NCBI RefSeq assembly: GCF_048593235.1
Contig: NC_133623.1
Span: 930,001 to 994,000 of the forward strand
Reading direction: 5' to 3'
Length of the DNA stretch: 64,000 nt
From: Sminthopsis crassicaudata
Taxonomy: Eukaryota
The position numbers were made by a program, and so were the translations under genes. The notes under the pieces are model-generated. The model was not told the origin of the DNA. It saw only the letters and a program-made list of their open reading frames with translations, and ran no database searches. Shown here in pieces: positions 10,901 to 63,882 of the stretch (position 1 is its first letter; each line of letters opens with the position of its first letter).

Positions 10901-13900
10901 TCAAGGAGCCCTTGCGCTTCCAGCCCCGGGCGCTGGCCGTGTGCCTCGAGGAGTCCTCCAAGAGGACAGTGACAAAGCCTCGGCGGCACCTCTCTGACTG
11001 CTGGGTCCCCGGCTGGACCTTGATCAAGGGTGAGTCTGGGCCACAGAAGCCAAGCGCGGCAGGGGCAGGGGGTGCCGAGGAGCGGACAGGGCAGCCGCGC
11101 ACAGGGTCCCGGGAGCCCCGAGTCCCAAGATTTGGGGCCGGAGAGGACTTCAGACCATCGAGAGCCATCCTGGAAACTGAGGCTCCAGGTGTCACTCAGG
11201 TAGCCAAAAAAGCCCCAACCCCAGAGCTTTGCTCAGCGAGCCTGGGTCACGGGGGAAGAGTAAGAGGCTCTGGCCCCTTGTGGTCTGTTCCATCCAGGCA
11301 ACCTGGTGACCATGCAGAAGCGGCGACTGGACGTGGTGGAGGTCAGCAACTGTGCCCACTTCTGGCCCATCGAGAGCTCCACGGCCTTCTGCGTGGAGGC
11401 CAAGAAGGTGATGGGCCAGAGCAGCTGCAAGGTGATAAGCACCCCCCAGCAGCCTGGGCCCTGGGCCTCAGCACCTCCTTCCTCCCCGGCCCTGGTCCTC
11501 ACTACCACCTGCCTCCCCCTGACAGGGAGATCTGGGAGCCCCACTGATGTGCCGCCCAAAGTCGCACCTAGAGGAGACGCCCTGGGTACAGATGGGGGTC
11601 CTCACCGCTTTTGACGAGACCTGCACTCGGCCCTATGTCTTCAGCCGCATCCACCCCTTCGACCTTTGGCTCAGGGCCTCCACGAAATCCCAGCACCCGC
11701 CCTGGGTCCGCACCGTCCCCAGGCCCACGCTCTCTTCCCTGCTCCAACCTGAAGGTGAGCGAGACTCTCCCCCCACACACACACACTGGGGCCCCCAGGC
11801 CTGGGGAAACAGAACCAGGAGGAAGAGGGCTCCCTGGGAGACTCGGGCGGGGCGGGGCTAGCTCCCGGGGACTGGGGCAGGGGCTTGGCCAGTGTGCGAT
11901 CTCTCCTGTGCCCACGTCCAGCCCTGGTGAATCGGATTTCTCTGCGCTTTGCCATGCCCTGGCAAGCACTGATCGTGACCTGCGACAGCAGACTTTGTGG
12001 CGGATCCGTCCTCAGTCCGTCTTGGATCCTGACCTCGGCCCACTGCATCCGGAACATGTGAGTGCTGAGCCGACGGGGGGAGGCCTTTGCAGGGCCGGCT
12101 TGCTCAGACAGCCCTCCCAGAGGAGGTGGCTGGGGGGGTTCCTCAGCAAATCGGGGCTCACAGGTGGCAGGCAGAACCAGGCCCCGTGTCCCTTAGCATA
12201 GCTAATGTTGGCGGGGGGGGGGGGGGGGGGGAGGTGGGCGAGGTGCACAATGTTCTCTTAAAGTCGCTTAGAGATCCCACGATCAGTCAGATCTGGGCAG
12301 CAGCCCGCTCAAGGGGTAAAAACTCGTCATTTCTTGTCCCGTGACAGGAGTACAGAGAACATGGCAGTATTCCTGGGACTACCACAGCCCGGGGGCAACA
12401 TGACCGTCGCCCATGTCTCCAGCGTGGTCCTGCATGAGCGGTACCAGTCAGTGGATGGGGTCCCCTGGAATGACCTGGCCCTCCTCCTCCTGCAGAAGCC
12501 CCTGAGCTCCAGCCAGCCACTGGCCCCCGTCGGCCACGTGGATGACGTGAACAAAGCCGAGTGCTGGCTCACGGGGCCCCGAGAACTCCGAGAGGGTGAG
12601 CTGGACGCGTCGTGGCCTGGAGCCCCGCAGCCACCGAATCTCTGAGCGAGACCTTGGCCCTGGGCCCTGAACCTGTAACAGGAGGGGGGTCCACACCAAT
12701 CTATGGGCAGCTCGCTTTTCCAGGCAATCCTGAAGTAGGCTGGGCCGCCCCTTAGGGAGTTCTCTTTAGAAGAGGCCTCGGGAACCCTCGAAGCGGTATT
12801 TGCCATGTGACAATCTGCCCTGAGCCGGGCCAAAGGAGGCTCCCAGGACGGGGCACCCCCTCTGCTAACACCATGACCCTGTGGGGGGTGGCCCGGGAGC
12901 ATGGCCAGCCCACCGTGGTGTGCTTACTGTTGGCTTAAAGCAAATAACAGCCATGGGCCCGGGAAGGGGAGAAAAGGGTTAGGGGCCGGACACGGCACGA
13001 GGGGTAGCAGACATGAGGCAGGCCAGAGGGAGGCAGTCCCCTCACTTCCCCATGCTCGGTGCTCCCCCTCACTTCCCCATGCTCGGTGCTCCCTGGTGTC
13101 GGTTTGGTTGAAGGGTGGGAGGGCAGGCAGAAGGGGGAAGGGTGGGAGGAGGAAAGGAGGAGGCAGATGAAGAAAGCGACGGGGGAGAGGAAGGCGCCCT
13201 AGCAGCTGGATTACATGCAAAAACCCTGAGCGCTGGTTCAAGAACAGCAGCTTCAGAAAGAGCCGCCCGGCGCCCTGCCCTTCCACGTGGGGGCACCCAG
13301 GAGCGGCGGCTCGGACTCCTCGATTATCGGAGTGCACACCCAAGCTCTGCTGTCCAAGATGTGCCCTTGGCCCGCTCCCAAGTCCTCGAGATTCCGCCCT
13401 GCTTCCTCCCCCCCTCACATAACCGTCAGGATGTCCAGCCACGTCCTCCTCCCTCCAGCTTGACGCTAGTCCCTCCGCCCACTGGCACTCAAAGCCGTAG
13501 GGCCGAGGAGATTGATTCCCGACTGTTTGCAGGCGAAACGGACCAGAACCCACAAGCCCTGCACGTTCAGGTGAAGGATGGTCTGTCCTGTGCCCGCCGC
13601 CTCCCTGGCAGCGTCAGGAACTCCGTGCTATGCCTGGGTCCCTGGGTGCCAGAATTCCAAGTGGCTTTGGTGAGTGGCCCCGAGGCCTGCTAGGGGAGGG
13701 GGGGTCCCCTTCGAAGAGTGGCACCAAGGCCCATCCCAGAGGGTTCATATTCATGATTGGAGGGCAGAGGGGAAGAGGTCAGGAACTTGAGCCCAACCTC
13801 AATGGGAGGGGGGGTGGGGGTGGAGGAGGATGGGAAACAAGAAAAAAGTTGGTGAAGGGAGCCAGGCTTATAACTAGGGGAGGGGCTCAACAAGGCTTGA

Positions 13901-14218
13901 CATGTGCGAGCGCCTCCGGGTTCTGGGTTTGTGCCACAGGATCTCATGGGCCCAGGCAGTGCCCTGTTGTGCCGCTCACGGGCTAAGAACGGGACCTGGA
14001 GGCAGACTGGGCTCACAAGCATCAGGTCTCTCACCTTCCTCCTGGCTCCTTACTTCCCCTGGATTTCCAAGACCACCTCTGTCCAGGCGGACCACAGGGG
14101 GCTCAATCAGTCGGTGGGCAAGTCAATCCCTGTCACATCTGCAGCAGGGGCAGAGCCCAGGGGCCCTCGGGGCCTCCTCTTTCTCTTGACCCTATGGCTG
14201 CGGTTCCTGAGAGCATAG
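4911..14218 (+). CDS. Unnamed multi-domain serine-protease-like protein: signal peptide, 3 catalytically dead trypsin-fold (S1) domains, long Pro/Thr/Arg repeat linker, GPI-type C-terminus (~1,759 aa)
   Basis: Exons: 4911-5004, 5071-5103, 5200-5374, 6345-6589, 7035-7180, 7301-10283, 10386-10557, 10761-11029, 11298-11431, 11526-11754, 11922-12057, 12348-12595, 13533-13669, 13940-14218. They sum to 5,280 nt and all phases are compatible. Each domain repeats the trypsin-gene phase pattern (1-2-1-0). N-terminus MRAVLGLCGLSLLVSCAAG looks like a signal peptide; C-terminus SAAGAEPRGPRGLLFLLTLWLRFLRA looks like a GPI signal. All junctions are GT-AG except intron 1, whose donor reads GG at 5005 (the 66-nt intron is in frame and stop-free). 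Confidence 0.75.
5260..7465 (+). other. Pseudoprotease domain 1 (exons 3-6)
   Basis: VADGGEEVPWLVSVARLCQGVVLDHWRVLSTARC (His57 position is Arg); KSDLGVLFL (Asp102 kept); DCQ|VQPGSPVLC (Ser195 position is Pro); RELVGLVS...AC...YRGWLDAV. Confidence 0.75.
5700..6130 (+). repeat. Degenerate intronic tandem repeat
   Basis: Alternating units tctgcctctgatctcca and tgtgtccctgatcttcatggggg recur several times in intron 3 of the protease-like gene. Confidence 0.75.
8205..9225 (+). repeat. Coding tandem repeat: 30-nt units (PATRGSLTFQ / PASRGPLTFH / PATGRLLTPR) with a 90-nt higher-order period, grading into 15-nt units (RPLTP, RPQIP)
   Basis: Unit ccagcaaccagagggtccctgacc(ttcc/cccc)(a/g)g is repeated for ~1 kb inside ORF 7301-10561, and that frame stays open throughout. 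Confidence 0.92.
10386..11700 (+). other. Pseudoprotease domain 2 (exons 7-10)
   Basis: KCGMRPGF...GEFPWVVSLQFSLSHFCSGSILNEWWVLTTASC (His57 position is Ser); GPTGLGLIQLKEP (Asp102 position is Gly); DCWVPGW; SCK|GDLGAPLMC (Ser195 position is Leu). All canonical disulfide cysteines are present. Confidence 0.88.
11922..14080 (+). other. Pseudoprotease domain 3 (exons 11-14)
   Basis: MPWQALIV...LCGGSVLSPSWILTSAHC (His57 kept); WNDLALLLLQKP (Asp102 kept); ECWLTG; DLMGPGSALLC (Ser195 position is Pro); WRQTGLTS...YFPWISK. Confidence 0.85.
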
Positions 14219-18154: not shown

Positions 18155-20221
18155 ATGGCGGCCACGCGAGGCATCCGCAACCTGCAGGTAGCCCCCGGTC
18201 GCCTCGTGCCCCGGGCTAGTAGGGCAGAGGAGGGCATTCCCCCCGGTTAAGGGGGCCCGGGCCTGAGCATTGGTGGGCGTGGGGCGCGCGGCCGCAAAGC
18301 CGCGCCATTGGCCTTATTGCTTGACCTTGCTGAATTTAGCCCGTTTCCCCCTCAGTAATTTGGGAACTCTGCGGTTCTGGGTGAGCGGAGCCTTTCCGGT
18401 CCCGTGGACTCGGAGCGGACGGAGCTGCCGTCGCCTCTTCCTCCCCCTACCACCTTCCCAGCCAGGGGAACTAATAGACTAATGGCTGGGGGGGGGGGGG
18501 GCCCCGAAGCTTTGCTACTTTTCTTCCCCTCCCCCCCTCCACTTCTGACTGCTTCCTACAGGGCATGGTTGGTGTGGTGACAGGCGGGGCGTCGGGCCTG
18601 GGCCAGGCCACGGTCAGGAGACTGGTTAAGAAAGGGGCCCGGGCCATCATCGTGGACTTGCCCCACTCCTCGGGCGAAGCGCTGGCAAAGGAGCTGGGTC
18701 CTTCCTGCGCCTTCGCCCCCACAGACGTAAGTCCGCATCCACTCCCTGACTTCCGGGGGGAGGGTGGGCGAGCACAGCGGTCCCAAAGGGCCGGCTTGCC
18801 CCGAGAACCGAAGTGGAGCCTGCCCTTCCCCACTTTCCGGGGGTTGGGGAGGAGGGCGACGGGCCAAGTTGCTACCCTAGGTGGCGAGCCGCCCGTGCCT
18901 GCTCTCCTCCTCCAAGGTAACCTCCGAAGGAGAGGTGCAGAGCGCCCTGACCTTGGCCCGGGAGAAATTCGGCCGCATAGACATTGCTGTTAATTGTGCT
19001 GGCGTAGCTGTGGCCTCCAAGACTTACAACTTCAAGAAGAAGGAAGCACACTCCCTGGAGGCCTTTCAGAAGGTGATCCAGGTGTGTCACGTGTGCCGGC
19101 CCTCCCCCCCGGACCCTGGGGCCCATAGATCCCATGTGGGACCAGCCCCCCCTGGTTTGAACCACTTGAAGTCTTGAGATGACTTCGCTACCAAAGGGCA
19201 GGCTGAGGCCCACTGAGCCCAAGGGTACCAGCACTGGCTTCCTCTGCCCCAGGTAAACCTGATCGGCACCTTCAACGTGATCCGCCTCGCCGCTGGGGAG
19301 ATGGGGAAGAATGAGCCCGACGAGGGTGGCCACCGGGGCGTCATCATCAACACAGCCAGCGTGGCTGCCTTCGAGGGCCAGGTATGCCTACGGCCCCCCT
19401 CTGCCCGCACCAGCCTGGGGGCCCGGTTCAGAGCAACTGATTCAGTGAACTCTTTGTTCCCAGGTTGGACAGGTTGCATATTCTGCATCCAAAGGGGCCA
19501 TTGTGGGGATGACTCTGCCTGTGGCCCGGGACCTGGCCCCCATGGGGATCCGGGTGGTCACCATTGCTCCAGGTAGGGTTCCCGTATCTCCAACTTCCGT
19601 CTCTCCCCAGCTTTGAGCAGGCCAACTTAAAACTTCTCAGAATTGAGAAAAGAAATGTACCCTAAAGGGGTCTTCGGGTGGTCCAATACCCTTCCCCCCC
19701 CCCCATTTGTCAGGGGAAAACCGAAGACGGGGGAGGGAACTTGACTACCAAGTCAGAACTCTCAGGACAGGGCTAATGGCTTCGACCAAAAGTTCAAAAC
19801 CCCCACTTGCCTTAAGAGTGCTGCACCAGGGTTGAAGTTGGGCCTAGGGTCAGGCAGACCCCAAGTTGCAACTCAGCCTGAGTTACGGTGGCCGATACTG
19901 GCCAAGCCACAGAGCCTTCTGTCTTGAAGAGTACCCACCCTCCTTCCCCAGATTACCAGGCGGGATCCACCTAGGGCCTATCTGTAAAGCGCTTGGCACA
20001 CAGCGGACACTCGGTCACGTTACTTTCTAGGCCTGTTTGAAACACCCCTCCTGTTGGGACTCCCTGAGAAAGTCCGCTCCTTCCTCGCCCGTCAGGTGCC
20101 CTTCCCCAGCCGCCTGGGCGATCCAGCAGAGTATGCCCACCTCGTGCAGGCCGTGGTGGAAAATCCCCTGCTCAACGGTGAGGTCATCCGGCTGGATGGA
20201 GGTATCCGCATGCAGCCTTAA
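18155..20221 (+). CDS. HSD17B10: 17-beta-hydroxysteroid dehydrogenase 10 / SDR5C1 / mitochondrial RNase P subunit MRPP2 (263 aa)
   Basis: Exons 18155-18187, 18562-18726, 18917-19081, 19253-19381, 19464-19572, 20031-20221. Rossmann motif [13 protein letters not shown], catalytic YSASK, C-terminus [15 protein letters not shown]. Sizes of exons 2-6 (165/165/129/109/191) match the remembered human structure. Confidence 0.97.
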
Positions 20222-20467: not shown

Positions 20468-23180
20468 TCAGCGGCTGCTGGTGTTGAACTGCAGGTAGAA
20501 CTGGGATGTGGGTTCGTTGGTGTAAACCACTTTGTCCAGGTAGTCCTTTCTGAAATGTAAAGCTTGGGTCAGCTCCGGGCCCTCCCTCAGGGCCCTCCCC
20601 CACCCTCCTCCGTCCTCACTCACTTGGCCTGCTGCTCTTGAGCCAGCTCCTTGTTGTAGGCGTCCAAGTCCCGACGCAGCTTCTGCGCTTGGAGCTGCTG
20701 CTCGTGTTCCAGTTGGCAAGCCGCCTGAGCAGCCATCTGCTCCTGACGGGCCCACTCGGCTTCCTGGCGCTTCTCGGCCTTCCGCCGGTGTTGGGCTTCA
20801 AGGCGCTGTCCTGCCTGTTCCTTCTGGATGGCCGCTATTTGCTCAGAGCTCATGCCCTTCCAGTGATTCTGGATCACTTTTTGTGATTTCAAGGAGGCAG
20901 GACACTTCTCAGTCAACATGTCGCTGGTCAGGTGATTATAGATTTCAGTGAGGTTGTCATCCTGCTCCCTCTGGCGGGCCAGTTGCTGCTGTATGTCCAT
21001 TTCTGTGGCCTGGGGGGGAAGGCAGGAAGTTCAGGCTTAGGGATAGCCCCTAACCATGGCCCTAGGGGGGCTGCCCACCCAGGCTCATAGAGTGGGCAGG
21101 GGCCTCCCCAAAGTGACCTAAGTAGGCCCACGGTCTCAGGATGGGTGTCTTTGCCCAAACCCTCCTCAGAGCCAGGGGAGCACCCTTTCCCTGCGATTCT
21201 GGAGCCCTCCTGTGGTGGGGTCTGCCCTTCTGCCAATTCTGAGGGGCATCAGGCTGGCAGGAATTTCTGTTCCCAAGCAGGATTTCTGAAAGTTTGGATT
21301 CATATAGCCAGGCCCGCCTGGTGACGGGGGTGGTCGGAGCCATGGAGTACCTGAGTCCTGTTGTAATTGGCCGTGGCCACGTCCTTGACTCTGCGGTGGG
21401 TAGCTTGTAGCTCATCCAGATGAACAGCACGCAGATCCATCTCTATCTGCCTCTGGCCCTCCAAGATATCTGCAGGGAGGGAGGGGACAGAGCAACTGAC
21501 TCAGTGAACACAAACTGGGGGGAGGGGGAGGGTTATCAATCTCTTCCGTTTGTTTTACTTTCCATTTTGTGACCGATCATAATGGCAGGAAAAAGACCAC
21601 TTTTTAACTTGGAGGTTAACAGAAGAGAGGTGGGGGGGGGGGGCTGTGATTGTAACAGGACCTCAGTGGGGGCTTGGGAGAGAGGAAGGTTAGAAAACAA
21701 GCGAGTTAGGAGACCTCTAGCAAGCACCACAGAGTTAGCACACCAAGGGGAGGGGGGGGAGGTGCCGTCCTCCATTTTTACAGTTGAGACAAGTGACTTG
21801 CCCAGAATCCCCCGGCTAAGAGGTTTCTGGGTTTGAGTGCTCGGGCAGTTGAGACAAGTGACTTGCCCAGAATCCCCCGGCTAAGAGGTTTCTGGGTTTG
21901 AGTGCTCGGGCAGAGCATTTTGGGCCAATGAGTGGATGATGGCAACGGCTGAACGAACTCGGCAAAGGGGCTGGCCTGACGGCACACAAGGCCCCAAGAG
22001 CTAGGACGGCGTCTGGCTCTTCCAGCAGTGCCTTGCCAAGGTTACAGGAGGGCAGAGCTGAGATCTGGGCTGTCCTCAGAGCATCTGTTCCTACCACACA
22101 TCCCTGGCTGGTGGAAAGAGCCTTTCCATCTGTGTTCCCCATCTGTCCCGCCGCCATTGCCCCACTCACCCAAGTACTTCTCCTGCCTCCTGGCCTGGAG
22201 GTGCTCCTCCCACTGGCGGCCCAAATCACGACGGGATTGTTCCTGTTGTAGACGCCGGCGGGTAGTGCTGTTCAGATCTTCCCCCGCAAAGTACTGCATG
22301 CTGGAGGGTCCACAGCAGGGGTCCTGGCTGCCTACTCTTATTGGCTTTCTCTGCAGTCTGGCTGGGTCACACAGGTCAAACTCTCGGCGGTGGTGGGGCT
22401 GCTGCTCCTTCTCACGAAATGCCTGCACTTGTTGAGCTACCTGTCGGGCACGCTGCGCTTCCTCCTTCTCCAGCATTTGGGCCATTAAGTCACACTGGAC
22501 ACGGTTAGCATCTGGAAGGGAAGGGTTACAGGTAGTCATGGGAACTGGATTCCTCTTTGGACCCTAGGGGGCAGACCCCCCCCCCAGGGCTCTTACTGAA
22601 AGCTTCCTCACGAGCCCGCTCAGCATCTTCTCTCTTTCTTCGCTCCATCACCTGGTTTTTTAAGGCTTCCATGTCCACCTGCCACAGATCAAGGAGTAAT
22701 TCCACTCAAGAACCCCCTGCCGCTTTGAATTGCTAGCTGGGATTTGGATGGGCCAGGGTGGGGTGGACCAGGTTAGTTCCTTCCCTCCAGGGAAACAGCT
22801 TTGGGCGTTGGATAGAAGGGGAGAAAGGGAAAGGAAGCAGCAGGGCAAAGAGCCACCCGAAATCGGAGGCCCAGTTTTTAGTCAGCTCTTGTTGCCCGCC
22901 CGCCCCCCCTTCCTATGGGACATCAGCCAACTCAATCTAGCCTGTTTCCAGGTCTATAAAATAAGGGGAAATGCTAAACTGCTCTTGGGGGGGGGGATGC
23001 CCTGGGCCTGGACCTGCTTCCTCACAGAGATGAATTCAGTTCTGCCATCTTAGGGAAACTCACCCCAATCACTTGGTTCTGAACATTAAAGATTCGGCTC
23101 TGCCTCTGTTTTTCTCGGGTTCTTCGGGCTTCAATGGCCACAGCCTGCTTCTGTTCAGATTGGATGTCTACTTTGAACAT
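20468..23180 (-). CDS. RIBC1: RIB43A domain with coiled-coils 1 (axonemal microtubule inner protein, 375 aa)
   Basis: Coding exons 23180-23064 ([39 protein letters not shown]), 22678-22597, 22511-22170 (RREFDLCDP...[13 protein letters not shown]), 21469-21351, 21009-20624 ([12 protein letters not shown]...WKGMS), 20549-20468 ([18 protein letters not shown]). All phases are compatible. Probable 5'UTR exons at 24009-23941 and ~24423-24401. Tail-to-tail with HSD17B10, as in human. Confidence 0.95.
21781..21912. repeat. Perfect 65-bp tandem duplication of a MIR/CORE-SINE-like fragment
   Basis: cagttgagacaagtgacttgcccagaatcccccggctaagaggtttctgggtttgagtgctcggg occurs at 21781 and again at 21846; it contains the SINE core motif aagtgacttgccca. 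Confidence 0.85.
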
Positions 23181-24400
23181 CCTACCTTGATACTGAGAGA
23201 CACAAGGAGCACTTAGGGGGGGTTTTCTGCTGTTCCTGGAGCTCCTTCGCAAGCTTCCGGCTGGAAGGACTGCTGTTACAATTCAGAGGAGCTGCAAGGA
23301 GCCCTTGTGATTACTAGTCAATTCAACAAACAGTTAATAGGCACCGGTGGAACAGCTGTTTCTAGAAACTGGTATTTCAGGGGCCATAACTTTTACACTG
23401 GTAAGGAAATACCAAGTCGTTTCAAGAACTAGGATGTTTAAGGAGGGGATGAGGAGAGGCACCTGGGAATTCTCCCCAGTGGGTCAGCCTAGAGCATTGG
23501 ACCCAGTGCCGGCCAGGTGGCCTCGGGGCAGGCTTTTTTTTTTTTTTTTTTTGTCTCTTTTCTCTTATCCTGGGGGCTAGGCCCAGGGCCCCTCAACTGT
23601 GCTTTGAAGAAAGAGGTTGGAATGGCAAGGTTTGGGATGACTGTGGTTGGCAATTACTTGGGTGGCCATTAGGAGTGCAGGACTGAATCCCAAAGCCAGA
23701 GGAAGCCAGGACATGGAAAGTGAGCAGTAGGCCCAGAAAAGAGCCTGGCAGGGGCTCTGCCTATGGACTCCGAGGAGCCCCCCCCCTTGAGTAGTGACCG
23801 AACTCTAGAAGAAATGAGCTGAGGTGCCCACCGGGATGGGCAGCAGGCAGCTGAGACCTGAGAAAAACGGCCCTGCCTTCAGTGGGCTAGTACTGGCCAG
23901 GACGGTTTCGGTGGAGTGAGAGGCTGGGGGAGACCCTTACCTGAATTTGCTCCTCAGTGCGTGCCTCAGAACGTCCTCCAGTATTCTGAAACCACTCTTG
24001 GCTCGATGTCTGATTGAAAGAGCAGGGAGCAGAGTTGGGACTGGGATCCTACCTCCCAGCCCAACTCTGGCCTTGGGGTCCCATCCCCACTAGAGCTTTG
24101 CTTTTGCCATGCTGGCTCTAGTTCTCCATGCCCTCCCTCCCCTCCCCCAGCAAGTTGGTCTTTAGGTCTAGCCTCCCATGATGTACTGAAAGCGATGGCC
24201 CGTTTCTGGGGGCTACAGTTTTTTGGGGGAAAGGGGACCTAGTTGCCCCCCCCCCAGGTCCAGTCCATACGGTCTTCCCTTTTTCTCGGTGCCGCCTCCC
24301 TTCCCCTTTCATGTCCCGCCCAGACCAGCTTCCCCTTCACTCTTGTCCCCCCCCTTTCCGCCGTTTGTCAGTCCCCAGCCCTCTCCCCCCACGTCCTCAC

Positions 24401-24485
24401 CTCCCGAGAGGGCTAGCTCCGACTCTGGAGAGTTGTCTGCTCCTGCACTTATATAGTGAGACGGCGTCACCGTTGCCATGGTAGT
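24401..24485 (-). promoter_or_regulatory. RIBC1 core promoter: first exon/donor, TATA-like box and RFX X-box
   Basis: Minus-strand donor (ag|gtgagg) at 24401/24400, TATATAA on the minus strand at 24449-24455, and GTTGCCATGGTAGT at 24472-24485 (close to the X-box consensus GTTGCCATGGYAAC). RFX control of ciliary genes is established knowledge. Confidence 0.6.
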
Positions 24486-24689
24486 GAACAAAGGGGAGGG
24501 GGATTCTTGCGTGAGTTCCGGTGGGAGCCGGGAGCCCCTCCCTCGCCCCTTCCGGTCTAGCCTGCCCCTCCCCCCCCCCCATTGGGAAAAGAAGCTTTTC
24601 CCGGTTTCTCTTCCCAGTTCATTTGGAGCCGATTCGGGAACAGAACCTGGAGTCTCCCCAGAGCCTTCCCACGGACGGGAGGAGGCGAG

Positions 24690-25640
24690 CTGGGCCATCT
24701 CCGCCCCGGACCGCGCGCCGGCGCAGGAGCGTCAAGAAGGCTTGAGTCGGTGCCAATAAAGTCCTTGTCTTCGTCCTGCTCGTTTGCGCACGCGCAGAAC
24801 GACCGCTAAGTTCTGGAGCCCGTGTTCCGGGGACTAGCCTATTCCTTCCCGAATGCGCGCGCACGTACGCGACTCCTCTGGCGCTGGTTAGCTAGCGCTG
24901 GCGATCGCCGGCCCGGTGTTTGCCCGCGCTGCTAGGTGTCGTCGCCCTCCCCCCGCCCCGCGGTGCCGCGGGTTCTCCAGCACTGCGCCGAATCGAGAAC
25001 TCCAAAGCCCACGAAGCTCGGCAGATCACCGGCCCTTCCAGAGGCCCTCCGGCCCGAACGGCTCAGGTAGGGGCACAGCACGAGTCGACCCCGGGCCGGA
25101 GTCGCGCGCCCCGCTCCCCCGGATTCAAGACGTGCGGCGGGGCCGGCCGGAAGTCGCCCTAGGGGCTCCGCCTCCCGGCCACACCTCTCCCTGCCGGAAG
25201 TCCCGCGCCTGCTCCGTCGGGAGGAGGACTCCTAGCTGAGGGGAGACTGCGGATTGGGGAGCCTCCGACGGGGGGGGGGGCGCACTCCGAGCCCTGTACC
25301 CCGAGACCGGGAGGGGAGGGGAAGGCCAGGGGCTGGCTCTCCGCAGGAGTTGGTGGGCACGGGGTGGGCGTGTTCTCCCACCGGGCCGGCCGCCCTTTTC
25401 CTCTCCAGAAACTAAGGAGGAACTTGGCCCGGTCGGGTGCCCCCCCAGCCTGTTCCTCCTCCCCGCTTGGGGTCTCCGGGGCGGTCTCCGGAGGCTGTGC
25501 CCGGGCTGGGGGCGGAGCTGGCGGAGGAACACGGACGGGCCGAAGCGGAGCTGCTGAAGGAGGAGGAGGAGGAGAGGCACGGAGGCGCCGGAGCCCCAGC
25601 CAGCCTGGCCAGCGCATCTTCTTCCTTAGAAAAGCCAGTG
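24690..25640. promoter_or_regulatory. CpG island at the ancestral RIBC1/SMC1A bidirectional promoter
   Basis: Dense CpG with NRF1-like motifs (tgcgcacgcgca at ~24785, tgcgcgcgca at ~24854); located where the head-to-head RIBC1/SMC1A promoter lies in human. Confidence 0.7.
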
Positions 25641-27830
25641 CTTGAACAAACTGATGGCTAAACGTTCCTGTGCCCCCCCCCCCATCTCTGTCTGTTTATG
25701 GAATACGTTTGCACACGCACACATACACACGTACCCCAACGGCTAAACACGAGCCTTAAATATGTGCCGGCTGCGTACACTGAAGGTGTGGGGAAGTGAC
25801 CCGCAGCTAGGGTTTGAAGGGTGGCTACTCTTGTACAAAGTGGGGGGGCTGGGTGCCCCCCTCAAAACAAAGGCCTGTGGATACCTTTAAAGTGCGCAAG
25901 GTGGAACTAACCCAGAAGCCTTGGCGGCCCAGCCCCCCTGGGCGGGAGGCCCAGCGCCTGAGATTTGGGGATCCCCGACTCCCCCGGCAGCCTGGCGTTG
26001 GACGAGAGGCGGCTGAAAGAGGAGCGGGAGGGCGTCTCACGGGGGACTTGGGGAAGTCAGCGGGCTGCCCGGGACTCCACTCTTACTTGGTTGGAACCTT
26101 CCTGCCATGTGCCGGAGGAGCGCAGTGATGGGAACCTGGCACGGCTGGGGGGAGGACGGCCAGGTGGGGTGTAGTCCCCCCTCCCTAGGAGAGGATAGCC
26201 GGTGGAAGGTGGTTAGAAGAGCGGCACAGGGGGGGGGGGCGGGGGAAGCCCACCTCGAGTTTGATCCTCACAATAACCCCGGGGAGTGGCTGCTGGCACT
26301 CCGCCCCTCATGTCAATAGCTCCGGAACCAAGACCTAAAAGGAAGTGGAATGGCTTGCCCAGGATCCGGGCCCGGTGCTTTGTGTACTGTGGGACACCGC
26401 CCCCGCCCCCCCCCCTTGGGGTTCATTGGCCAAGAGGAGGCAGGCTAGGCCAGGCTACGATTCAGGGGCTCGTCCTGTTGTCAGAGACCCGAGCTGAAGT
26501 CCCTTCTTGCCTTATCCCAAAAGTCTCACCGGGCCTGCCTCGGAACTCCCCACATTCCCCTCCGCTAGCTGTACCCTGGTCATGTCAGAGGGCTCTTCCC
26601 CAGACCTCCGTCCTCCATTTGAGAACACAGGTGGGCCTGGCATGTAGCTGCAGCGTGGGTCATCCCACCCTCTTCAAAGAGGCTGCCTGGGAAGCTGGTA
26701 CTGAGACTGACTCATTGACTAGGGCCGGGGCCCAGCTGCCTTGGTGGTACCAGAAAGCCAGGGCTCCTCGTCCCCCTCCACTGGCCGGACCCGGAGCTCG
26801 CGGGACTCTGCACCACAGAAATTTGGCAGGAGAGGAATGCTTCACATTTAGGGTTAGAAACATTTTAGCTTCTGACAGGAAGAGTCTTTGGGACGAGTTC
26901 TGGGAGACATTAGGTGGTAAGGGGGGCACGGGACACCGCGCCAGCTCAGTGGTGCTTCCAAGGAGCTGAAGAGGTCTGGGCCTGGTTCTTGGCCCCAGGG
27001 GGGGCCAGCCTGGCATCTACCGCTCAGGGCCGGGCCAGCAGAGACCAAGTCCACAAGTCTGGGAAGGGCTTAAGCTGGGGTTGCCCGGGAGTTGAGGGTT
27101 CTGCCCCTTGGCTTTCAGTGCCCTTCATCGTCAGCCCTGCCTCCGGCACTTGAGGGCACTCCAGAGCTAGCTTCTGGACAAAGCACGTTCAGTGGACAGT
27201 CCGAGGAGAGTCCAATGGATGTGTTGCCAAGGCCTATGTCGGGGGGGGGGGGGGGGGGATCACCGGCTCTTCCAGCGAGGGGACTGTGCTGTCACCGAGG
27301 AGCCGATGTTCGGCATCATGGGAGATCTAGATGCCGGCCTAGCTCGACTCCCAAGTCCTGTGTGTGGACAGCAGAGCCACCCGAACACACTTGGGGCCTG
27401 CAGGTCAGGGCCTCAGGCCTCTGGCTGAGAATCGGGGCTTTTAAGGCAGTGAGAGGAGGCGTCCCTGTCTTGGTGCAGAGTGGCAGGAGCCCCCGGCCTC
27501 CCTGAGGGCCGGGTATATCCTACAATAAAGTTGGGAAGCTTTCTCTCGCATGAATCCCATGCCAGTTTCGTTCATTGCTGTCCGAAGATGAGGGGCAGCG
27601 GGTAGTCACACATAACTAGCCCTGCAGTTTTCTGAGAGAGGCCCAGTGGCTGCTTGTAAGAAAAACAAATGCCCCTACGGGGCCACTGCTCGCTCATCTC
27701 TGTTGGCTGGGGAGATTGCGAGATGATGACAGGTGGGGGTCTCCTCCCAGTCCACGGCTGCACCGAGCCACTCGGGCCCCGGGCCCTTCGGGCAAGGAAC
27801 CTTCCTTGAGTGGCCTGTAACCTGAGGGAG
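24968..27830 (+). pseudogene. SMC1A: Unprocessed, heavily decayed SMC1A relic
   Basis: Exon-1 relic 24968-25066 translates (A)GSPALRRIENSKAHEARQITGP-FQRPS---GPNGSG|gt versus SMC1A [37 protein letters not shown]. The ATG is replaced by GCG, there is a 1-nt deletion at ~25034 and a 9-nt deletion at ~25050, and the phase-1 donor after GPNGS-G is retained at 25067. Weaker collinear matches to remembered downstream exons lie at ~26631-26705, ~27270-27350, ~27581-27690 and ~27796-27828. No intact SMC1A ORF in the window. Confidence 0.82.
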
Positions 27831-29779
27831 GGACAAGACCCACATGGCCACTCTCTGGGCTCTCAGCCAGCTGGGGCCACGGAGGCCACTTGGACTTGCC
27901 GTCTCTCTGCCTAGCCTTTCTCATTCCTTCAGACCTGCCTGCCGGTGCCCGGTATTGAGCCAGAGAACCGGGAGACCCTGAAAGTGTCTCCTTGGGGCTT
28001 TGGAGTCGGTAGACTCTGAACTGGACCCCAGCAGGAATGAGGCTGGGGTCATGTTAGATTGCTGCGGGAGGCCCCTTGTTCTCTAAGTGAGGTGGGCCTA
28101 AGGGCTCCTGCCGGGTGGAGAGCCTTGGGGGTCAGGAGCCAGGCCCACTGCTTTCCGTGGGGGGGATTGGGGGAATGAAATGTGGGGCGTTCTTGGCTGG
28201 CACCTGCAGGGTTAAAAATCCCTCTCTACCAAGTTCTTTGGAAGCCATTGTCATGGGAACCAGTTTGGCAGCCTAGCCAGTGTTAGGAGCTAAGATGGGG
28301 GTTGGAGGGCCTGCTTGGCAGGCTGGCGGGCGGCGGGCAGGTGGTGGGTGGCTTCAGGTTTCTTCCCTAGAAACCTCAGGGCCTGCGAGCCGGAGCTCTT
28401 GTGCTCTGCCCATCCTTGCCCAGCGGGTGGCTGCGGAACACAATGGTGCTGCCAGGCCACAGTCAGCCTCAGCGGGGTCCTTGGCCAGAATTTCAAAGCA
28501 GATTGCCTGATCGAGAGAGGGCCTCGGAGGCCCTCTGGTCTGACTCCTTTGTTTCACTGAGCTTGGGAAAGGGACTTGACCAAGGTCACACAGCCGTTAA
28601 TCCGTACCCCAGTGGCTGGGCCGAGCCTAGCCTGGTACCTGTACTCTGCTCTTTCCTGAGGATTTCCTACCGGTAGCTCGCTCAGTGCCCTGGGAGACTT
28701 CTTCTTGTCTCCTGTGCCTGCCAACCAGCAGCCTGGGCCTTGTTAGCCCTCACAGCTCCAACGTGGTTTGACCCTCGTGCCCTATCCCTCACTCCCCCAC
28801 CATCTTCCTGGAACCCACCTGCAAGCTCGCAGCACTGCTGCCCTCCCCACAGCAGACTGTGTGGGTGAGCTAGGAAGCCAGGAGGGAGGCTGGCGCGCGC
28901 GTGTGTGTCCAAGCACGAGAGACTTGGGCCGAGAGCTGCCGAGCCTTGCCTTTGGGAGCGGAGGATACCGCTTAACTCTTTGGACCTGGCGCCCGTTCGG
29001 CCCATTGTCCCTGCCAATCACATTCCTTGGAGCTGCCTACCTGGGGCTCTGGCTCATCTGCTTGCCTTCTTTTCTCGGGGAGTTCACCTGGGTCACCTCT
29101 GACCTCAGAGGGGAAGTCCATTGGACACATGGGAAACTGAGGCCCTGAGAGAGATTGAGACGGGGCCAAGGTCCCAGAAGAGGTGTCTTGAGGGACCAGG
29201 TCTGAGAAGACAAGCAGGGAGGCTGGTGCCCCTGATTCCAAGAGGGATTCCGAGGCAGGGAAATGCAGGGAAAAGATGGAAAGAGCTGGAGGCTGCCATT
29301 AGCTGTCCTCTCCAACTGTCTTTTAAGTGGCTGCAGAGGGGGAGGGGGAGAGGGAAGGAGCGTTTCCAGGTGCCGGACTGAACACTTCGAGCTCCGTCCT
29401 AGCCCTGGGGCCTCACGACAGCCACTTGGAAGTCACTGCTGTTCTTGTCTTGGAGTTGAGGAGACTGGGGCAGGCAGAGGCCTAAGGACCGATCGCTCGG
29501 GAAGATGTACAGCCCTCCGACACATTGGAGCACCGTCACTTCAGCAGCGCCGCTTCCATTCTCTCGGGTCGAGCGCCATTGATCCACTGAGGGGACAGTC
29601 GGAGGGGGCCGGAAGAGGCTTCATGTGGGAAGCTGGCTGGGCCTGGGGAAGGGGGGTGCAGAGACATGCTCGGTCAATAGACCGGGCTGTACAGGCCCTG
29701 AAGTTCACAAAGAAGCCATTGCTGAAGGTGGGGACATGCCACGGAATTGGCCCAAGGGACACCAGAAAGTCATCTGAAG

Positions 29780-31240
29780 CTTCTGAGGCAGGGAAATAGC
29801 CTCGGGAAGATGATTCTGGCAGCAGGGTGAGACTGAATTACAGAAGAGAGAGCCCAGAATTGGGGGACTGGAAGAGAAATGGAGCTCTGAAGGAGGCCTC
29901 GGGAGGAGAGGAGCGCGAGAAACGTCGTCGAGCTTGGCAACGGATTAAATGGAGAGGGAGGGGAGGAAGTAGGGATGGTTCAGGGCACAAATCCAGGTTA
30001 AGATAGTGAGCGTCGAGGGGTGAAAATCACAAAGTCTGTTTCGGAGATGACATGTTGAGATGTCCAGCAGGAAAGCTGGAGCTCAAGGGAAAAATGAGGA
30101 GCTCAAGCTCCCCTACCCCCCCCCCCCCAGGAAACGCCCAGGACACCTTGCAGTGCCCACAGTGTGAGATGGCAGCAAGGGAGGCAGAGAAGGAGCGGTC
30201 AGGCGGGTGGTTGAAATGTTCAGGAAACCCAGCAGCAGAGGGTGAGTTGCCACGTCCCGAGCTGTAGGTAGGTCCTGGAGAACGGAGAGCTTGGTGGATG
30301 GGAAGACTGACGTTTCTACAGGGCTTCACACATTGGCTTCCTTGATACACCCCATAGTAACCCCTGGAGGTTGCTATAGATGAGGAAACTGAGTCTGACA
30401 GAGGGTGGTGATAGCTGAGAAAAGGCTACCAGGGTTAGCTGTTCAGAAGAGATCATTCATAACCTTGGAGGGATCCATTTCAGTTGAGGGATGAGGTCGG
30501 AATTAGCCAGATTGTGAGGGGTTGAGAAGTGAGTGGGAGGTGAAAAAGTGGAGGCACCAAGTGTAGACAGCTTTTTCTAGGAGTTAGGCTGAGAAAGGAG
30601 GAAACTAAAGTTGAGGTAGGGGGTGGGGACAGTCCAAAAGTGCAGGCTCGATGGGCTTAAGAGCCCAAGTTCAAGTGGTTGACCTCGGGGGGTCAGTAGA
30701 CACTGGAGCAAAAGAGGGGAGAGATGGGGGATGATGACAAGGGGCTTTGAAGAACAGCCAGGTCCCGACTGGTGTCCTGGTGGCCCCACACAGCAGATCC
30801 AGACGACCCAAAAGTGGGATCATGTCAAGTACAGTCATCGCTTCTAGCCCAGTGGAGTTGAAGAACGGACCGTGGGAGTCATTGCAGGCACTCCAAGGGT
30901 AGAGGCCCATTACTTCTGGAGGCCGGGAACAGTGGAAGGACTGGAGGCTTCAGTGAGAGAGGGATGGGAAGGGAAGAAGTATTAGGAGCAATTTGGAGCT
31001 CACGCGTGGTGGGAAGGTTGATGTGGGAAACATTCTGGAAGCTTGCCTTAGAGTCGGCAGACTTGAGAATGGCCTCGAGCCTGAGAACAGAGGGGGCTGT
31101 TACCGTCACCAAAAATAAGGAATACCGGGGAAGAGTGAGCTTGGAAGAACAGAGCCGGAACTCCAGTCTCGACATCTCGGGTTCGAGCCACTCTGTAAAA
31201 CATGAGAGCCGTCCCACACGATTCTCTGATTGGGAATGAG
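29780..31240 (-). mobile_element. Ancient LINE-2 fragments
   Basis: Diagnostic L2-like text such as ...ccagattgtgaggggttgagaagtgagtgggaggtgaaaaagtggaggcacc..gtgtagacagctttttctaggagtt.. (30505-30590) and gacatgttgagatgtcc (30047-30063). Recognised by pattern only; boundaries are approximate. Confidence 0.6.
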
Positions 31241-31911
31241 GCGGCGGCAGGGAGATCAGGACCCCGCAAGTGACAGGCGAGTGGAGTGCGGAACCGCGGG
31301 AGTTGGGGAGAGACCGGCTGCAGGCCCTCAGAGATCCTCGTCCAGCCATAAGTGACCCGCTTTCTGCTAAGACACGGGCACAAACACGCCGCCCACGACG
31401 CTGAGCTGACAAACCCAACGGTGACCGAGAGGATGTTGCCATGTGGTTTGGCAGGCCGCTCTGCAGCCCCAGGGATCCTTCTGCTCCAGCCAGGTTTCCC
31501 CCCCTTTTTTCTCTCCTTTTTTTTCCTGGTTAAACACAGTACATGGAGCCTTTAAATACACATTTCTCTATGAATCATGGGGGGAGAGAAGAGTCGGAAT
31601 TTGAGTTTGACGCTGCCAGGTGACGGCTTCCATCTTCTCGGTCCTGTGATTTCCATTCTTGGGTCTTGCCAGTGGTGGGAAGTGGAAATGAATGAGCTGG
31701 GGGTTCTCACCGCCATAGAGCTCCCCCCCCCCCCCCCCCCCGGGTGCTGGGGCAGATGCCCAGGGGAAGGGCTGGGGAAGAAGATGCGGGAGGCAAGGAT
31801 GGGTTTAGCATGAGCCCAGAGGAAGGCTCCGAGGCTGGGCCTCTTGCTCTCCTATAGCCCTCGTCAACCTCTGCTAATTACTAGGGAGCTGCTTCTCCAA
31901 GAAGACCAAAA

Positions 31912-32640
31912 TGACGTCACTTGGTTAGAGGAGTCGAGTTACAGTGGCCCATCAGACCCCTAGGGGCCCCGGCCACAGTCCCCGGAGACATCTGGGGGCT
32001 TCTCTGACTGCCCCGGGGGGCGGGCCTCTCCCCATCCGGCGTTGAGGGCCGTTCTGTGGAGCTGCCTCCCCGACTTCCTCCCTGCTGGGCATCCCATTGT
32101 CGCCCCCCCTTCAGGAAATGGGGCCCAGGCTGGGCGGGGCGGGGGCGAGCCCGGAGCTGGATCTCCAAGGGCAGTCGGGCTTCGGGGAGCCCGGGGAGCT
32201 GAAGGTAGCGCGGTGCGCGCTGCCCACGGGCCGCCTCCTGACCTCGGCGGCAGCGTGCCTCTGGGGCCCCGCGCTCTCGGACAGTGAAGGCCGGGCTCGA
32301 GCGCAGGGGCGGCCGGGGCGGCCGTGGGATGGGGATGGGCCAGAATCTAGAGCCTGCCTTCGCGGCAGGCGCGCGGGTCACCCCGCCCCCATGGGGGCCC
32401 TCGGCAGAGCTGCCTAATTAGCTGCGCCACCTCTGGATTAAACACCGATCTGTCCCTCCCTGCGGAGCTCCGAACGTCTCTGGCGCCTCCTCTGGGAAAA
32501 CAGGCTCGGGGCTTCCTCGCGCCCCCCCAAAAAGTCCGCCCTGCGCGCCGCCGCCGCCGCCTCTCGGATTGGCCCCTCCAGCTGAGGGCCGGCCCAGAAG
32601 CCCCGAGGCACCTATTTAAGGAGAGGGCCCGCCCCAGCCT
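31912..32640 (+). promoter_or_regulatory. Candidate upstream promoter elements of IQSEC2: full CRE (TGACGTCA 31912-31919), ATTGG at ~32568, TATTTAA at ~32614, GC box at ~32627
   Basis: Motifs read directly within a CpG-rich region upstream of IQSEC2 exon 1; TSS not determined. Confidence 0.4.
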
Positions 32641-33139
32641 TGCCCCCGCTCGGCACCAGCTGCCCTCGCCGCCCCCCCCCCTCCCTTCCACTGGCCCTTC
32701 CCCCTTCCCTGGCAGAGCAGGCTCCCCCTGGGGATCGGAAGCTTCCTGGGGGCAGGACTGTGGCGGTGTTTCAGTTCTCCCAGCTCCAGGCTGGGCGTTG
32801 CGCTTCCGACCCGGCCGAGGTCCCACAGCCACAGGCTCCCAGCTCGGCCCGGGCCCCGAACTCCCCAGGACTCTCCCCAGCTGAGCGCGAGCCAGGTTGG
32901 GGAGGGGGCTCGGCCAACTAGGGGCTTCGGCCCTGTTTTCCAGCCGTTCGTGCGGGGGCTGCGAAATCTGGCCCCCTCCTCACCCGTCCGGGATCCCGAG
33001 CCGGCCCCAGCCCCGGGGAGCTGGGAGAAACCTTAGGCTGCCCAGACTCGCCCAGGGTCGAGCCTGCCCCAGGAGTGTGGGCAGCGCACTCTGTGGGGGG
33101 GGGGGGGAGCGGTGATCCGTGATCCAGACCCCGCGGCCG

Positions 33140-33740
33140 AGGGGAAAGGAAGAGAAGGGGGCCCGAGGAGGGGAGGGAGAAGGGACAGAAGGAGGAAGAT
33201 GAAGAGGAGGAGGAGAAGAGAGAGGAGGAAGATGAGGAGAAGGGGGAGAAGGAGGGGAGGAGGAGAAGAGAGAGAAGGAGGAAGATGAAGAGGAGGGGGA
33301 GGGGGAAGAGGGGAGAAGGAGGAAGATGAAGAGGAGGAGGAGGAAGAGGGGGAGAAGGAGGAAGATGAGGAGAAGGGGGAGGAAGAGGGGACAAGGAGGG
33401 AGATGTGGAGAAGGGGGAGAAGGAGGGGACGAGGAGAAGAGAGAGAAGGAGGAAGAGGAGGAGGAGGAGAAAGAGGGGACAAGGAGGGAGATGTGGAGAA
33501 GGGGGAGAAGGAGGGGAGGAGAGAGAAGGAGGAAGGTGAAGAGGAGGAGGAGGGGGAGGAGGAGGAAGAGGGGAGAAGGAGGAAGATGAGGAGAAGGGGG
33601 AGGAGGAAGAGGGGACAAGGAGGGAGATGTGGAGAAGGGGGAGAAGGAGGGGACGAGGAGGAGGGAGATGAGAAAGGGGAGGAGGAGGGAGAGAAGGGGG
33701 ACGACCGAGAAGGGGGGGGGGGAGAGAAGAAGGAACGCGA
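33140..33740 (+). repeat. GA-rich low-complexity tract upstream of IQSEC2 exon 1
   Basis: ~600 nt of nearly pure A/G (gaggagga, gaagaggg, ggagaagg units). Confidence 0.9.
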
Positions 33741-34492
33741 GGACCGGGAAGGAAGGGGCGGAGCCGGGGGGCGGGGCCCCGGGAGCGCCAGGTACCGTGG
33801 CTGAGCGGGCGCGCCGCCCCAGCCGGCTGGGCCCGGGGGGCTGCCCCCCCCCCCCCCGCGTGTTGCGCTCTGGGCAGGCCCGAGCGACGGACGGACAGAC
33901 GGACGAGCGCCAAGAGGGACGGAGGGAGGCGGGGCTAGCCTCGGGCTCGGGGGAGGCGGGCCCAGGGGCGGGCTCGAGGGCGGGCGCTGTCCCGGTCGGG
34001 GCGGGCCCAGGGGCGGGCTCGGTCTGGGCACTGCGCAGTGACTCCGCAGCGGAGCTGGAGCCCGAGCCGGGAGCCGGGAGCCGGGAGCCGGGAGCAGGGA
34101 GCCGGGAGCCGGGAGCAGGGAGCCGGGAGCCGGAGCCCGAGCCCAGGCCAGCTCCGCTGGGCCGATCGCTGGGTCGAGCCTTCTTCCCTCCCCCCTCCTC
34201 TTCCTCTTCCTCTTCCTCCTCCCTCCCGCATTATCTCCCCCCCCACCCCGCCTCCCGTCGGCCCCTCTCCCCAGGCCCGCAGCCCCCGTGCGCGCCCGCA
34301 ACCCTCGGCGGCCCCCTCCCCCCGGGCCGGCACCAGCGCCAGCGCCGGGACCCGGGGGGGGAGGACGGAGAGGCGGCGGCGGAGGAGGAGAACGACGACG
34401 ACGACGACGAGGAGGAGGAGGAGGAGGAGGGCCGAGGCAGCTGCCTCCGGGGGCCGCGGCCCGAGGCCCCGGGCGCCCGCAGCGGGGCCCCC

Positions 34493-63882
<29,390 letters not shown>

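What the first reader, a model, noticed from the sequence alone, without database searches (positions are those of the whole stretch)
24968..25068. Fossil exon 1 of SMC1A: an essential cohesin gene is dead at its ancestral locus
Seen: codon-by-codon alignment to SMC1A residues 1-37. G2, L6, I9-N11, K13, R18-I20, G22, F24-R26 and the Walker-A start G32-P-N-G-S-G37 are preserved, and many of the other differences are single-base changes (TTC>TCC, TAC>CAC, ATC>ACC, GGT>GCT). The ATG is gone, there are 1-nt and 9-nt deletions, and the splice donor sits where I recall human exon 1 ending (c.109). Established: human order is HSD17B10-RIBC1-SMC1A-IQSEC2, with RIBC1 and SMC1A head to head, and SMC1A is essential. 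There is no assembly gap in this interval. Inference: a functional copy must exist elsewhere, plausibly an autosomal retrogene that escaped meiotic sex-chromosome inactivation and replaced its parent (an orphan retrogene).
Basis: partly seen in the sequence, partly recalled or inferred. Interest (0 to 1): 0.86.

Follow-up and report, generated by a model that had tools for sequence, protein, structure and literature searches.

The report
Dead SMC1A first exon in marsupials
A decayed copy of the first coding exon is all that remains of the essential cohesin gene SMC1A at its ancestral site next to RIBC1 in this dasyurid marsupial; the same relic is in Antechinus and koala, platypus has the intact gene there, so marsupials must run cohesin from a copy elsewhere that I could not locate.

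Summary
Window 24968-25066 (+) is a broken copy of SMC1A coding exon 1. The start codon is now GCG, there is a 1-nt and a 9-nt deletion, and 19-21 of 34 aligned codons are kept, depending on how codons 1-5 are aligned. The GT donor sits at the conserved exon boundary. A frameshift-aware alignment scores 65, against 35 for the next best site in the window and at most 49 in 90 simulated windows (P about 1e-4).

The relic lies head to head with an intact RIBC1, between HSD17B10 and IQSEC2. No other SMC1A exon is detectable in the 64 kb. Only 9.4 kb, without gaps, separates the relic from the IQSEC2 start codon.

New here:
- RIBC1 similarity places the genome among dasyurid marsupials.
- Antechinus and koala carry the same relic, with shared ATG>GCG and shared replacements but different indels, and no exon 2.
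- Platypus has an intact 1233-aa SMC1A at this position.
- The gene therefore died here before dasyurids and diprotodonts split.
- One RNA contig splices the relic's donor (25066) to an IQSEC2 exon (55597), so promoter and donor still work.

A working copy elsewhere follows from published full-length marsupial SMC1A. Its place, and whether it is a retrogene, remain untested.

The parts
24968..25066 (+). Relic of the coding part of SMC1A exon 1 (codons 1-37): GCG in place of ATG, a 1-nt deletion at codons 22/23, a 9-nt deletion of codons 29-31. The last 16 nt (GPNGSG) are intact.
25067..25068 (+). GT splice donor at the conserved exon 1 boundary, still used: an RNA contig of run X11 continues from 25066 into 55597.
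24646..25066 (-). Non-coding first exon of RIBC1 in the shared CpG-island promoter. It overlaps the relic in antisense. The minus-strand introns 24442-24645 and 24010-24400 (CT..AC) are seen in RNA contigs. In runs X12 and X17 contigs run on to about 25250.
   Evidence: tables 5 and 8; CpG observed/expected 0.66-0.72
20471..23282 (-). Coding exons of an intact RIBC1 (RIB43A family), 86-94% identical in protein to Antechinus flavipes RIBC1.
18571..19499 (+). HSD17B10 exons (short-chain dehydrogenase motifs), the other ancestral neighbour.
25069..34493 (+). The 9.4-kb interval where SMC1A exons 2-25 should lie. It has no N and no SMC1A-like coding remnant. It is collinear with the Antechinus and koala loci and includes a purine-rich tandem array at 33165-33705.
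34494..35288 (+). Start of IQSEC2: ATG at 34494, [13 protein letters not shown] at 34547, ending ...TTLRRK with GT at 35289.
55597..55909 (+). IQSEC2 exon (SVEGDAP...STDLQDKK) whose acceptor receives the relic's donor in run X11. The first in-frame AUG of that chimeric RNA is at 55751.

Best explanation
The 99-bp stretch is what is left of SMC1A at its ancestral site.

In an ancestor of dasyurid and diprotodont marsupials another copy of SMC1A took over (inferred). The old gene then lost its start codon, and exons 2-25 were removed, most simply by deletion, because the two flanking genes RIBC1 and IQSEC2 stay adjacent and in their original orientation. Exon 1 survived because it lies inside the CpG-island promoter that RIBC1 still needs, and it is overlapped in antisense by RIBC1's first exon (inferred reason).

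Since then the relic has decayed independently in each lineage. Its promoter and splice donor still work: transcripts start there, and at least some splice from 25066 to an IQSEC2 exon 30 kb downstream (shown by one contig). That chimeric RNA has no start codon from the relic, so it is at most an alternative 5' leader for IQSEC2.
For: - Relic identity and significance.
- Exon boundary conserved in real SMC1A genes.
- Synteny with HSD17B10, RIBC1 and IQSEC2.
- No other SMC1A exon. Twenty-two motifs were absent. Three PDB-checked segments score 35-42. A full-length SMC1 open reading frame, real vertebrate exons, and axolotl and gar SMC1A find nothing above low-complexity background.
- Ancestral state in platypus: a 1233-aa SMC_N/SMC_hinge gene head to head with RIBC1, with exons 1-3 within 5.4 kb.
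- Same relic, without exon 2, in koala (score 81) and Antechinus (score 68), with collinear flanks.
- Shared ATG>GCG, F3S, S14A, K16E and I21T, but lineage-specific indels.
- The relic sequence is confirmed by RNA contigs of four studies and by DNA runs of two samples.
- Donor use 25066>55597 with GT..AG.
- Marsupials express a conserved full-length SMC1A (PMC4529305).
Against: - The working copy was not found, so replacement is inferred rather than shown.
- The 29.5-34.5 kb part of the interval was not checked against reads.
- The splice to IQSEC2 rests on a single contig in a single run.
- For opossum, tammar, brushtail possum and sugar glider only gene calls were available, not DNA. Their lack of an SMC gene within 10 kb of RIBC1 is weak evidence, because echidna shows the same.
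- The reason for the relic's retention (promoter constraint) is not tested.
Confidence: 0.85

Rival explanations
1. One reading: the working SMC1A is an intronless autosomal retrogene that replaced its X-linked parent (an orphan retrogene), favoured by escape from meiotic sex-chromosome inactivation.
For: - The parent is dead at its ancestral site in at least three marsupials.
- Marsupials have a conserved 1233-aa SMC1A.
- Orphan retrogenes are a documented class in mammals (PMC4772013).
- An earlier unchecked note of this scan reports a retrocopy replacing ELP5 in this genome.
Against: - Nothing here shows where the working copy is or whether it has introns.
- SMC1A has a 3.7-kb coding sequence, and full-length retrocopies of that size are uncommon.
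- Out-of-X retrogenes normally coexist with the parent and are testis-biased. SMC1A must be expressed everywhere and is dosage-sensitive, which a DNA-level duplicate carrying its own promoter would satisfy more easily.
- No paper in the searchable library reports it.
Confidence: 0.4
2. The working SMC1A arose by a DNA-level duplication or transposition of the whole intron-containing gene to another place, possibly on the same chromosome. The original body was then deleted.
For: It fits the same facts: a dead exon 1, the body gone, and flanking genes still adjacent. It also carries promoter and regulation with the gene.
Against: Not tested. Relocation of a gene of tens of kb is rarer in mammals than retroposition.
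Confidence: 0.35
3. An assembly error hides an intact SMC1A in this interval, or the defects of the relic are sequencing errors.
For: The region is very GC-rich (0.61-0.78). Only 23.5-29.5 kb was laid against reads.
Against: - Contigs of four RNA studies match the relic exactly, and two DNA samples hold the region.
- There is no N between 20 and 50.9 kb.
- Two other species' assemblies show the same relic, the same collinear downstream sequence and no exon 2.
- The relic's donor splices to IQSEC2, not to an SMC1A exon 2.
Confidence: 0.03
4. The match to SMC1A is a chance resemblance in GC-rich promoter DNA.
For: phmmer on single frames finds nothing. tblastn gives only E=0.009.
Against: - The frameshift-aware score of 65 compares with a simulated maximum of 49, P about 1e-4 for the whole window.
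- The position is exactly where platypus has exon 1 relative to RIBC1.
- The donor is in the conserved phase.
- Less decayed versions exist in koala (81) and Antechinus (68).
Confidence: 0.01

Closest known systems
Orphan retrogenes / parental gene replacement (for example RNF113A, MARS2, TRMT12; Ciomborowska et al. 2013; Carelli et al. 2016, PMC4772013)
   Same: An essential gene is dead or absent at its ancestral locus while the lineage keeps a conserved functional protein made from another locus.
   Different: Here only the dead parent is shown. The replacing copy, and whether it is intronless, were not seen. SMC1A is not named in the main text of Carelli et al. 2016 (PMC4772013), whose Table 2 is not held as text.
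Unprocessed (unitary-type) pseudogene remnants left in bidirectional promoters
   Same: Disabling changes (start codon lost, frameshift, in-frame deletions) accumulate independently in related species on a shared dead backbone. The remnant sits in a CpG island still used by the neighbouring gene.
   Different: Only one exon of 25 survives. Its splice donor is still used.
Transcription-induced chimeras / promoter capture by a downstream gene
   Same: Transcripts that start at one gene's promoter splice from its first exon into exons of the next gene on the same strand (25066 to 55597).
   Different: The upstream gene no longer exists. The leader supplies no start codon, and three out-of-frame AUGs precede the first in-frame one. 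Support is a single contig.
The paralogous head-to-head pair RIBC2-SMC1B (human 22q13; from my own knowledge of the human map)
   Same: A RIB43A-family gene shares a bidirectional promoter with an SMC1 gene.
   Different: The flanking genes here are HSD17B10 and IQSEC2, which mark the SMC1A locus. Platypus has SMC1A at this site.
ELP5 relic in this same genome
   Same: An essential gene decayed at its ancestral locus in this marsupial, said to be replaced by a retrocopy.
   Different: That note is unchecked by me. For SMC1A the replacing copy is unknown.

Membership tests
SMC1A exon 1 (N-terminal SMC head, start of Walker A) | Sequence similarity to SMC1A residues 1-37 beyond chance | tested here: met
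   The score is 65, against 35 for the next site in the window and at most 49 in 90 simulations. The score is 57 with the L003 exon 1. It is the top tblastn hit with axolotl SMC1A, E=0.009.
SMC1A exon 1 (N-terminal SMC head, start of Walker A) | Phase-1 intron after the first base of codon 37, with a GT donor | tested here: met
   The window has ...GGC TCA G|GTAGG. The same boundary is seen in L003 and platypus. The donor is used in RNA.
SMC1A exon 1 (N-terminal SMC head, start of Walker A) | Head to head with RIBC1, between HSD17B10 and IQSEC2 | tested here: met
   Platypus has SMC1A at the same position relative to RIBC1.
Functional SMC1A gene | Start codon and open reading frame through exon 1 | tested here: not met
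   GCG replaces ATG, and there is a 1-nt and a 9-nt deletion.
Functional SMC1A gene | Downstream exons (rest of Walker A, hinge, signature motif and Walker B) | tested here: not met
   Nothing above background appears in the whole window. Platypus serves as a positive control, scoring 199 for residues 38-77.
Orphan retrogene system | Parental gene dead at the ancestral locus in the lineage | tested here: met
   Seen in the window, Antechinus and koala.
Orphan retrogene system | Intronless functional copy elsewhere, derived from the parental mRNA | not testable with these tools
   No tool searches this genome.
Orphan retrogene system | Replacing copy under purifying selection | not tested
   Literature only: rat kangaroo SMC1A has 1233 aa, is 97% identical to human and 99% to opossum and devil (PMC4529305).
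SMC1B exon 1 (paralogue) | Closer to SMC1B than to SMC1A, at the RIBC2 locus | tested here: not met
   The score is 53 against SMC1B (sequence from memory, unchecked) and 65 against SMC1A. The flanking genes are those of the SMC1A locus.

The most novel reading that the evidence does not exclude
On the marsupial stem lineage the essential, dosage-sensitive cohesin gene SMC1A was replaced by a copy elsewhere, possibly an intronless retrogene. Its abandoned CpG-island promoter and first exon have been kept for tens of millions of years. They serve as RIBC1's promoter and as a live first exon that now feeds transcripts into IQSEC2, or in koala and sugar glider into an unnamed predicted gene.
Probability: 0.35. 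Interest if true: 0.7.

Novelty: new member of a known kind. Interest (0 to 1): 0.6.

Why it matters
SMC1A is an essential core cohesin subunit. It is X-linked in eutherians, partly escapes X inactivation in humans, and is mutated in Cornelia de Lange syndrome. If marsupials make it from a different locus, several things follow:
- Its dosage, its X-inactivation status and its behaviour in male meiosis differ between the two therian branches.
- Marsupials become a natural experiment on how a dosage-sensitive housekeeping gene can be moved.
- Annotation pipelines that use synteny to call SMC1A orthologues will be misled in marsupials.
- The relic shows how a dead gene's promoter and splice donor can stay active and be taken over by neighbouring genes.

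I found no paper in the searchable library that reports any of this. That library lacks most subscription journals, so the finding may still be known.

Tried and rejected
1. phmmer of the single reading frames against PDB found no SMC hit, as expected for short frame-shifted pieces. One search was in the wrong frame through my own slip.
2. Pfam on the two open frames over the relic found nothing.
3. The 21/34 count comes from that rejected alignment.
4. An E-rich open frame at 25515-25634 resembles SMC1 residues 160-200, scoring 49-53. Another purine-rich tract scores 47, so I treat it as low-complexity noise.
6. A homologue search with the 107-aa open reading frame over the relic, to find orthologous relics directly, gave no hits.
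7. Attempts to reach a marsupial SMC1A protein and its gene structure failed. A metagenome scan gave invertebrate cDNAs and one fish-like genomic contig. The last homologue search listed 120 hits that ended at fish and axolotl.
8. An Rfam scan of the window found nothing.
9. Seven literature searches found no report on the location of marsupial SMC1A.
10. Gene calls alone cannot show absence. Echidna has no SMC1A exon 1 within 10 kb upstream of the RIBC1 coding start either.

Full report
**What is at the coordinates**

Window 24968-25066 (+) reads GCG GGT TCT CCA GCA CTG CGC CGA ATC GAG AAC TCC AAA GCC CAC GAA GCT CGG CAG ATC ACC GG-CCC TTC CAG AGG CCC TCC GGC CCG AAC GGC TCA G, followed by GTAGG.

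I confirmed the reference peptide, SMC1A residues 1-40, as identical to PDB chains of human SMC1A (8roc_A, 6wg3_A). Against it the relic shows:
- 19-21 of 34 aligned codons kept, depending on how codons 1-5 are aligned;
- no start codon;
- one base lost in the GGC/CCC run;
- three codons (29-31) lost.

The exon ends after the first base of codon 37. That is the exon 1 boundary in two real SMC1A genes fetched here: a fish-like genomic contig, L003 (...GGA TCT G|GTATG), and platypus (...GGC TCA G|GTGAG).

**Is it more than chance?**

Standard searches of the separate frames fail. I therefore wrote a frameshift-aware protein-to-DNA local alignment.

| Search | Result |
|---|---|
| SMC1A 1-37 against the window, best site (25068, +) | 65 |
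| Same query, next best site on either strand | 35 |
| Ninety first-order Markov simulations of 64 kb (window-wide and CpG-island composition) | mean 39.5, maximum 49; Gumbel P 6e-5 to 1.4e-4 |
| L003 exon 1 peptide against the window | 57, next site 37 |
| tblastn with full-length axolotl SMC1A | relic first at E=0.009, all else E>4 |

**Is it an assembly error?**

No. RNA contigs from four studies cover the relic with no listed difference or indel. DNA runs of two samples hold 0.97-0.98 of the sampled words for 23.5-27.5 kb. The only N runs in the window are at 50958-51191 and 59458-59902.

**The neighbourhood**

- HSD17B10 lies on the + strand at about 18.6-19.5 kb (motifs and the adh_short family).
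- An intact RIBC1 lies on the - strand. Its coding exons run from 23.2 to 20.47 kb (RIB43A, E 1e-35 to 1e-37).
- RNA contigs show two minus-strand introns in the RIBC1 leader, 24010-24400 and 24442-24645. They also show a first exon, 24646-25066, that runs antisense across the relic.
- IQSEC2 starts at 34494 and continues to the end of the window.

Only 9.4 kb lies between the relic and IQSEC2.

**Is the rest of SMC1A there?**

No.
- Twenty-two SMC1A motifs, allowing 25% mismatch, are absent from all six frames. IQSEC2 and HSD17B10 motifs typed the same way were found at once.
- Three PDB-checked segments (residues 38-77, 530-576, 1125-1164) score 35-42, inside the null range.
- A full-length SMC1 open reading frame from a metatranscriptome contig (L009), real vertebrate exons from L003, and full-length axolotl and gar SMC1A all find nothing above purine-rich low-complexity background.

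**Which genome, and how old is the loss?**

A RIBC1 exon led to annotated RIBC1 proteins of many species. The window's RIBC1 is 86-94% identical to that of Antechinus flavipes and 55-74% identical to other marsupials.

I fetched the RIBC1 loci of four species.

| Species (locus) | SMC1A exon 1 score | Residues 38-77 score | Other findings |
|---|---|---|---|
| Platypus (L083) | 188 | 199 | A 1233-aa SMC_N/SMC_hinge gene head to head with RIBC1; exons 1-3 within 5.4 kb |
| Koala (L081) | 81 | at most 34 | Window collinear in patches to 31.85 kb |
| Antechinus (L082) | 68 | at most 34 | Window collinear over 19.0-32.1 kb at 81-83% identity |
| Echidna (L084) | none in the 10 kb fetched | none | See the limits below |

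The four-way alignment shows that all three marsupials share ATG>GCG, F3S (TCT), S14A (GCC), K16E and I21T. The indels differ by lineage:
- the window has -1 and -9;
- Antechinus has +4, which creates a TAG, and -1;
- koala has a different -9 that removes G-P-N.

This is the pattern of a sequence that was already dead in the common ancestor and has drifted since. The loss therefore predates the split of dasyurids and diprotodonts. That split is many tens of millions of years old on my general knowledge; I did not test the date here.

For opossum, tammar, brushtail possum and sugar glider no DNA was served. Their gene calls show no SMC gene within 10 kb upstream of RIBC1. Echidna shows the same, with no exon 1 in the 10 kb fetched. 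I give that evidence little weight, so a marsupial-wide loss is likely but not shown.

**How the body was lost**

RIBC1 and IQSEC2 remain neighbours in the ancestral orientation. The simplest event is therefore an internal deletion from intron 1 to beyond the last exon. An inversion or a translocation break would have separated the flanking genes. This step is inference.

**The relic is still alive as RNA**

In run X11 a contig matches up to 25066 and then continues for 255 letters. The first 30 of those letters are exactly window 55597-55626, preceded there by AG. This is a canonical GT..AG splice on the + strand from the old SMC1A donor to the IQSEC2 exon SVEGDAP....

The relic supplies no AUG in the IQSEC2 frame. 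The first in-frame AUG is at 55751, after three out-of-frame ones. The chimera is therefore at best an alternative leader.

In koala and sugar glider the annotation places an unnamed predicted gene (148 and 239 aa, no Pfam family) starting at this promoter. This suggests the promoter stays active there too.

**Where is the working gene?**

It was not found. The rat kangaroo expresses a 1233-aa SMC1A that is 99% identical to the annotated opossum and Tasmanian devil proteins and 97% identical to human (PMC4529305). Marsupials therefore have a conserved SMC1A made somewhere.

I found no paper reporting the location of marsupial SMC1A. Orphan retrogenes are a known class (PMC4772013).

**Verdict**

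- The core reading, a fossil exon 1 of an essential gene at its ancestral locus, is supported and extended to two more marsupial species, with platypus as the intact outgroup.
- The retrogene and meiotic-inactivation parts are untested.
- It is a new member of a known kind: a parent gene lost after duplication. Its active leftover promoter and donor are an added point of interest.

Noticed in passing
window 25031: In run X12 a contig joins 169 letters (CATCATGCTGCTGCCTGAGAGCAAACGCAA...) directly before 25031, inside the relic. Those letters occur nowhere in the window, and the junction has no splice-site dinucleotides on either strand. It may be a chimeric contig or a trans event.
   Followed up: partly
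L081 5378-8670 (-) in koala; the same position in sugar glider: NCBI annotation places an unnamed predicted gene (148 aa in koala, 239 aa in sugar glider, no Pfam family) that starts at the relic's promoter and runs downstream. This suggests a spliced transcript from the old SMC1A promoter in diprotodonts.
   Followed up: no
window 25416-25658 (+): An E-rich open frame 450 bp downstream of the relic resembles SMC1 residues about 160-200 (ELAEEHGRAEAELLKEEEE against ELAQEYD.RKKEMVKAEED). It scores 49-53, no better than another purine-rich tract (47), so I read it as low complexity.
   Followed up: yes
window 34494-35288: The first IQSEC2 coding stretch changes reading frame between CHLHHE (one frame) and [14 protein letters not shown] (another). 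A GCC/PQ-rich repeat lies at 35040-35183. This is either a short intron or a lineage-specific rearrangement of this low-complexity part.
   Followed up: no
window 33165-33705: A purine-rich (GAGGAG-type) tandem array of about 540 bp lies upstream of the IQSEC2 CpG island, with periods of 18, 41 and 136.
   Followed up: partly
gene calls around RIBC1 in other species: In opossum HUWE1 follows HSD17B10 within about 6 kb. In Antechinus and tammar a trypsin-domain gene follows HSD17B10 instead. An earlier first-reader note places a trypsin-fold gene at 4911-14218 of this window, which I did not check.
   Followed up: no
L084 (echidna): No SMC1A exon 1 lies within 10 kb upstream of the RIBC1 coding start in echidna, unlike platypus, where it is 4.6 kb away. 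The first RIBC1 intron may be longer, or the arrangement may differ.
   Followed up: partly
window 26229-26270 and 27240-27260: Contigs of run X5 break at G or C runs and show back-joints and skips (26246>27240, 27259>25557, 29353>25558) with poly-G letters between. These are probably sequencing or assembly artefacts. X5 covers everything evenly and behaves like DNA, although it is labelled RNA.
   Followed up: no
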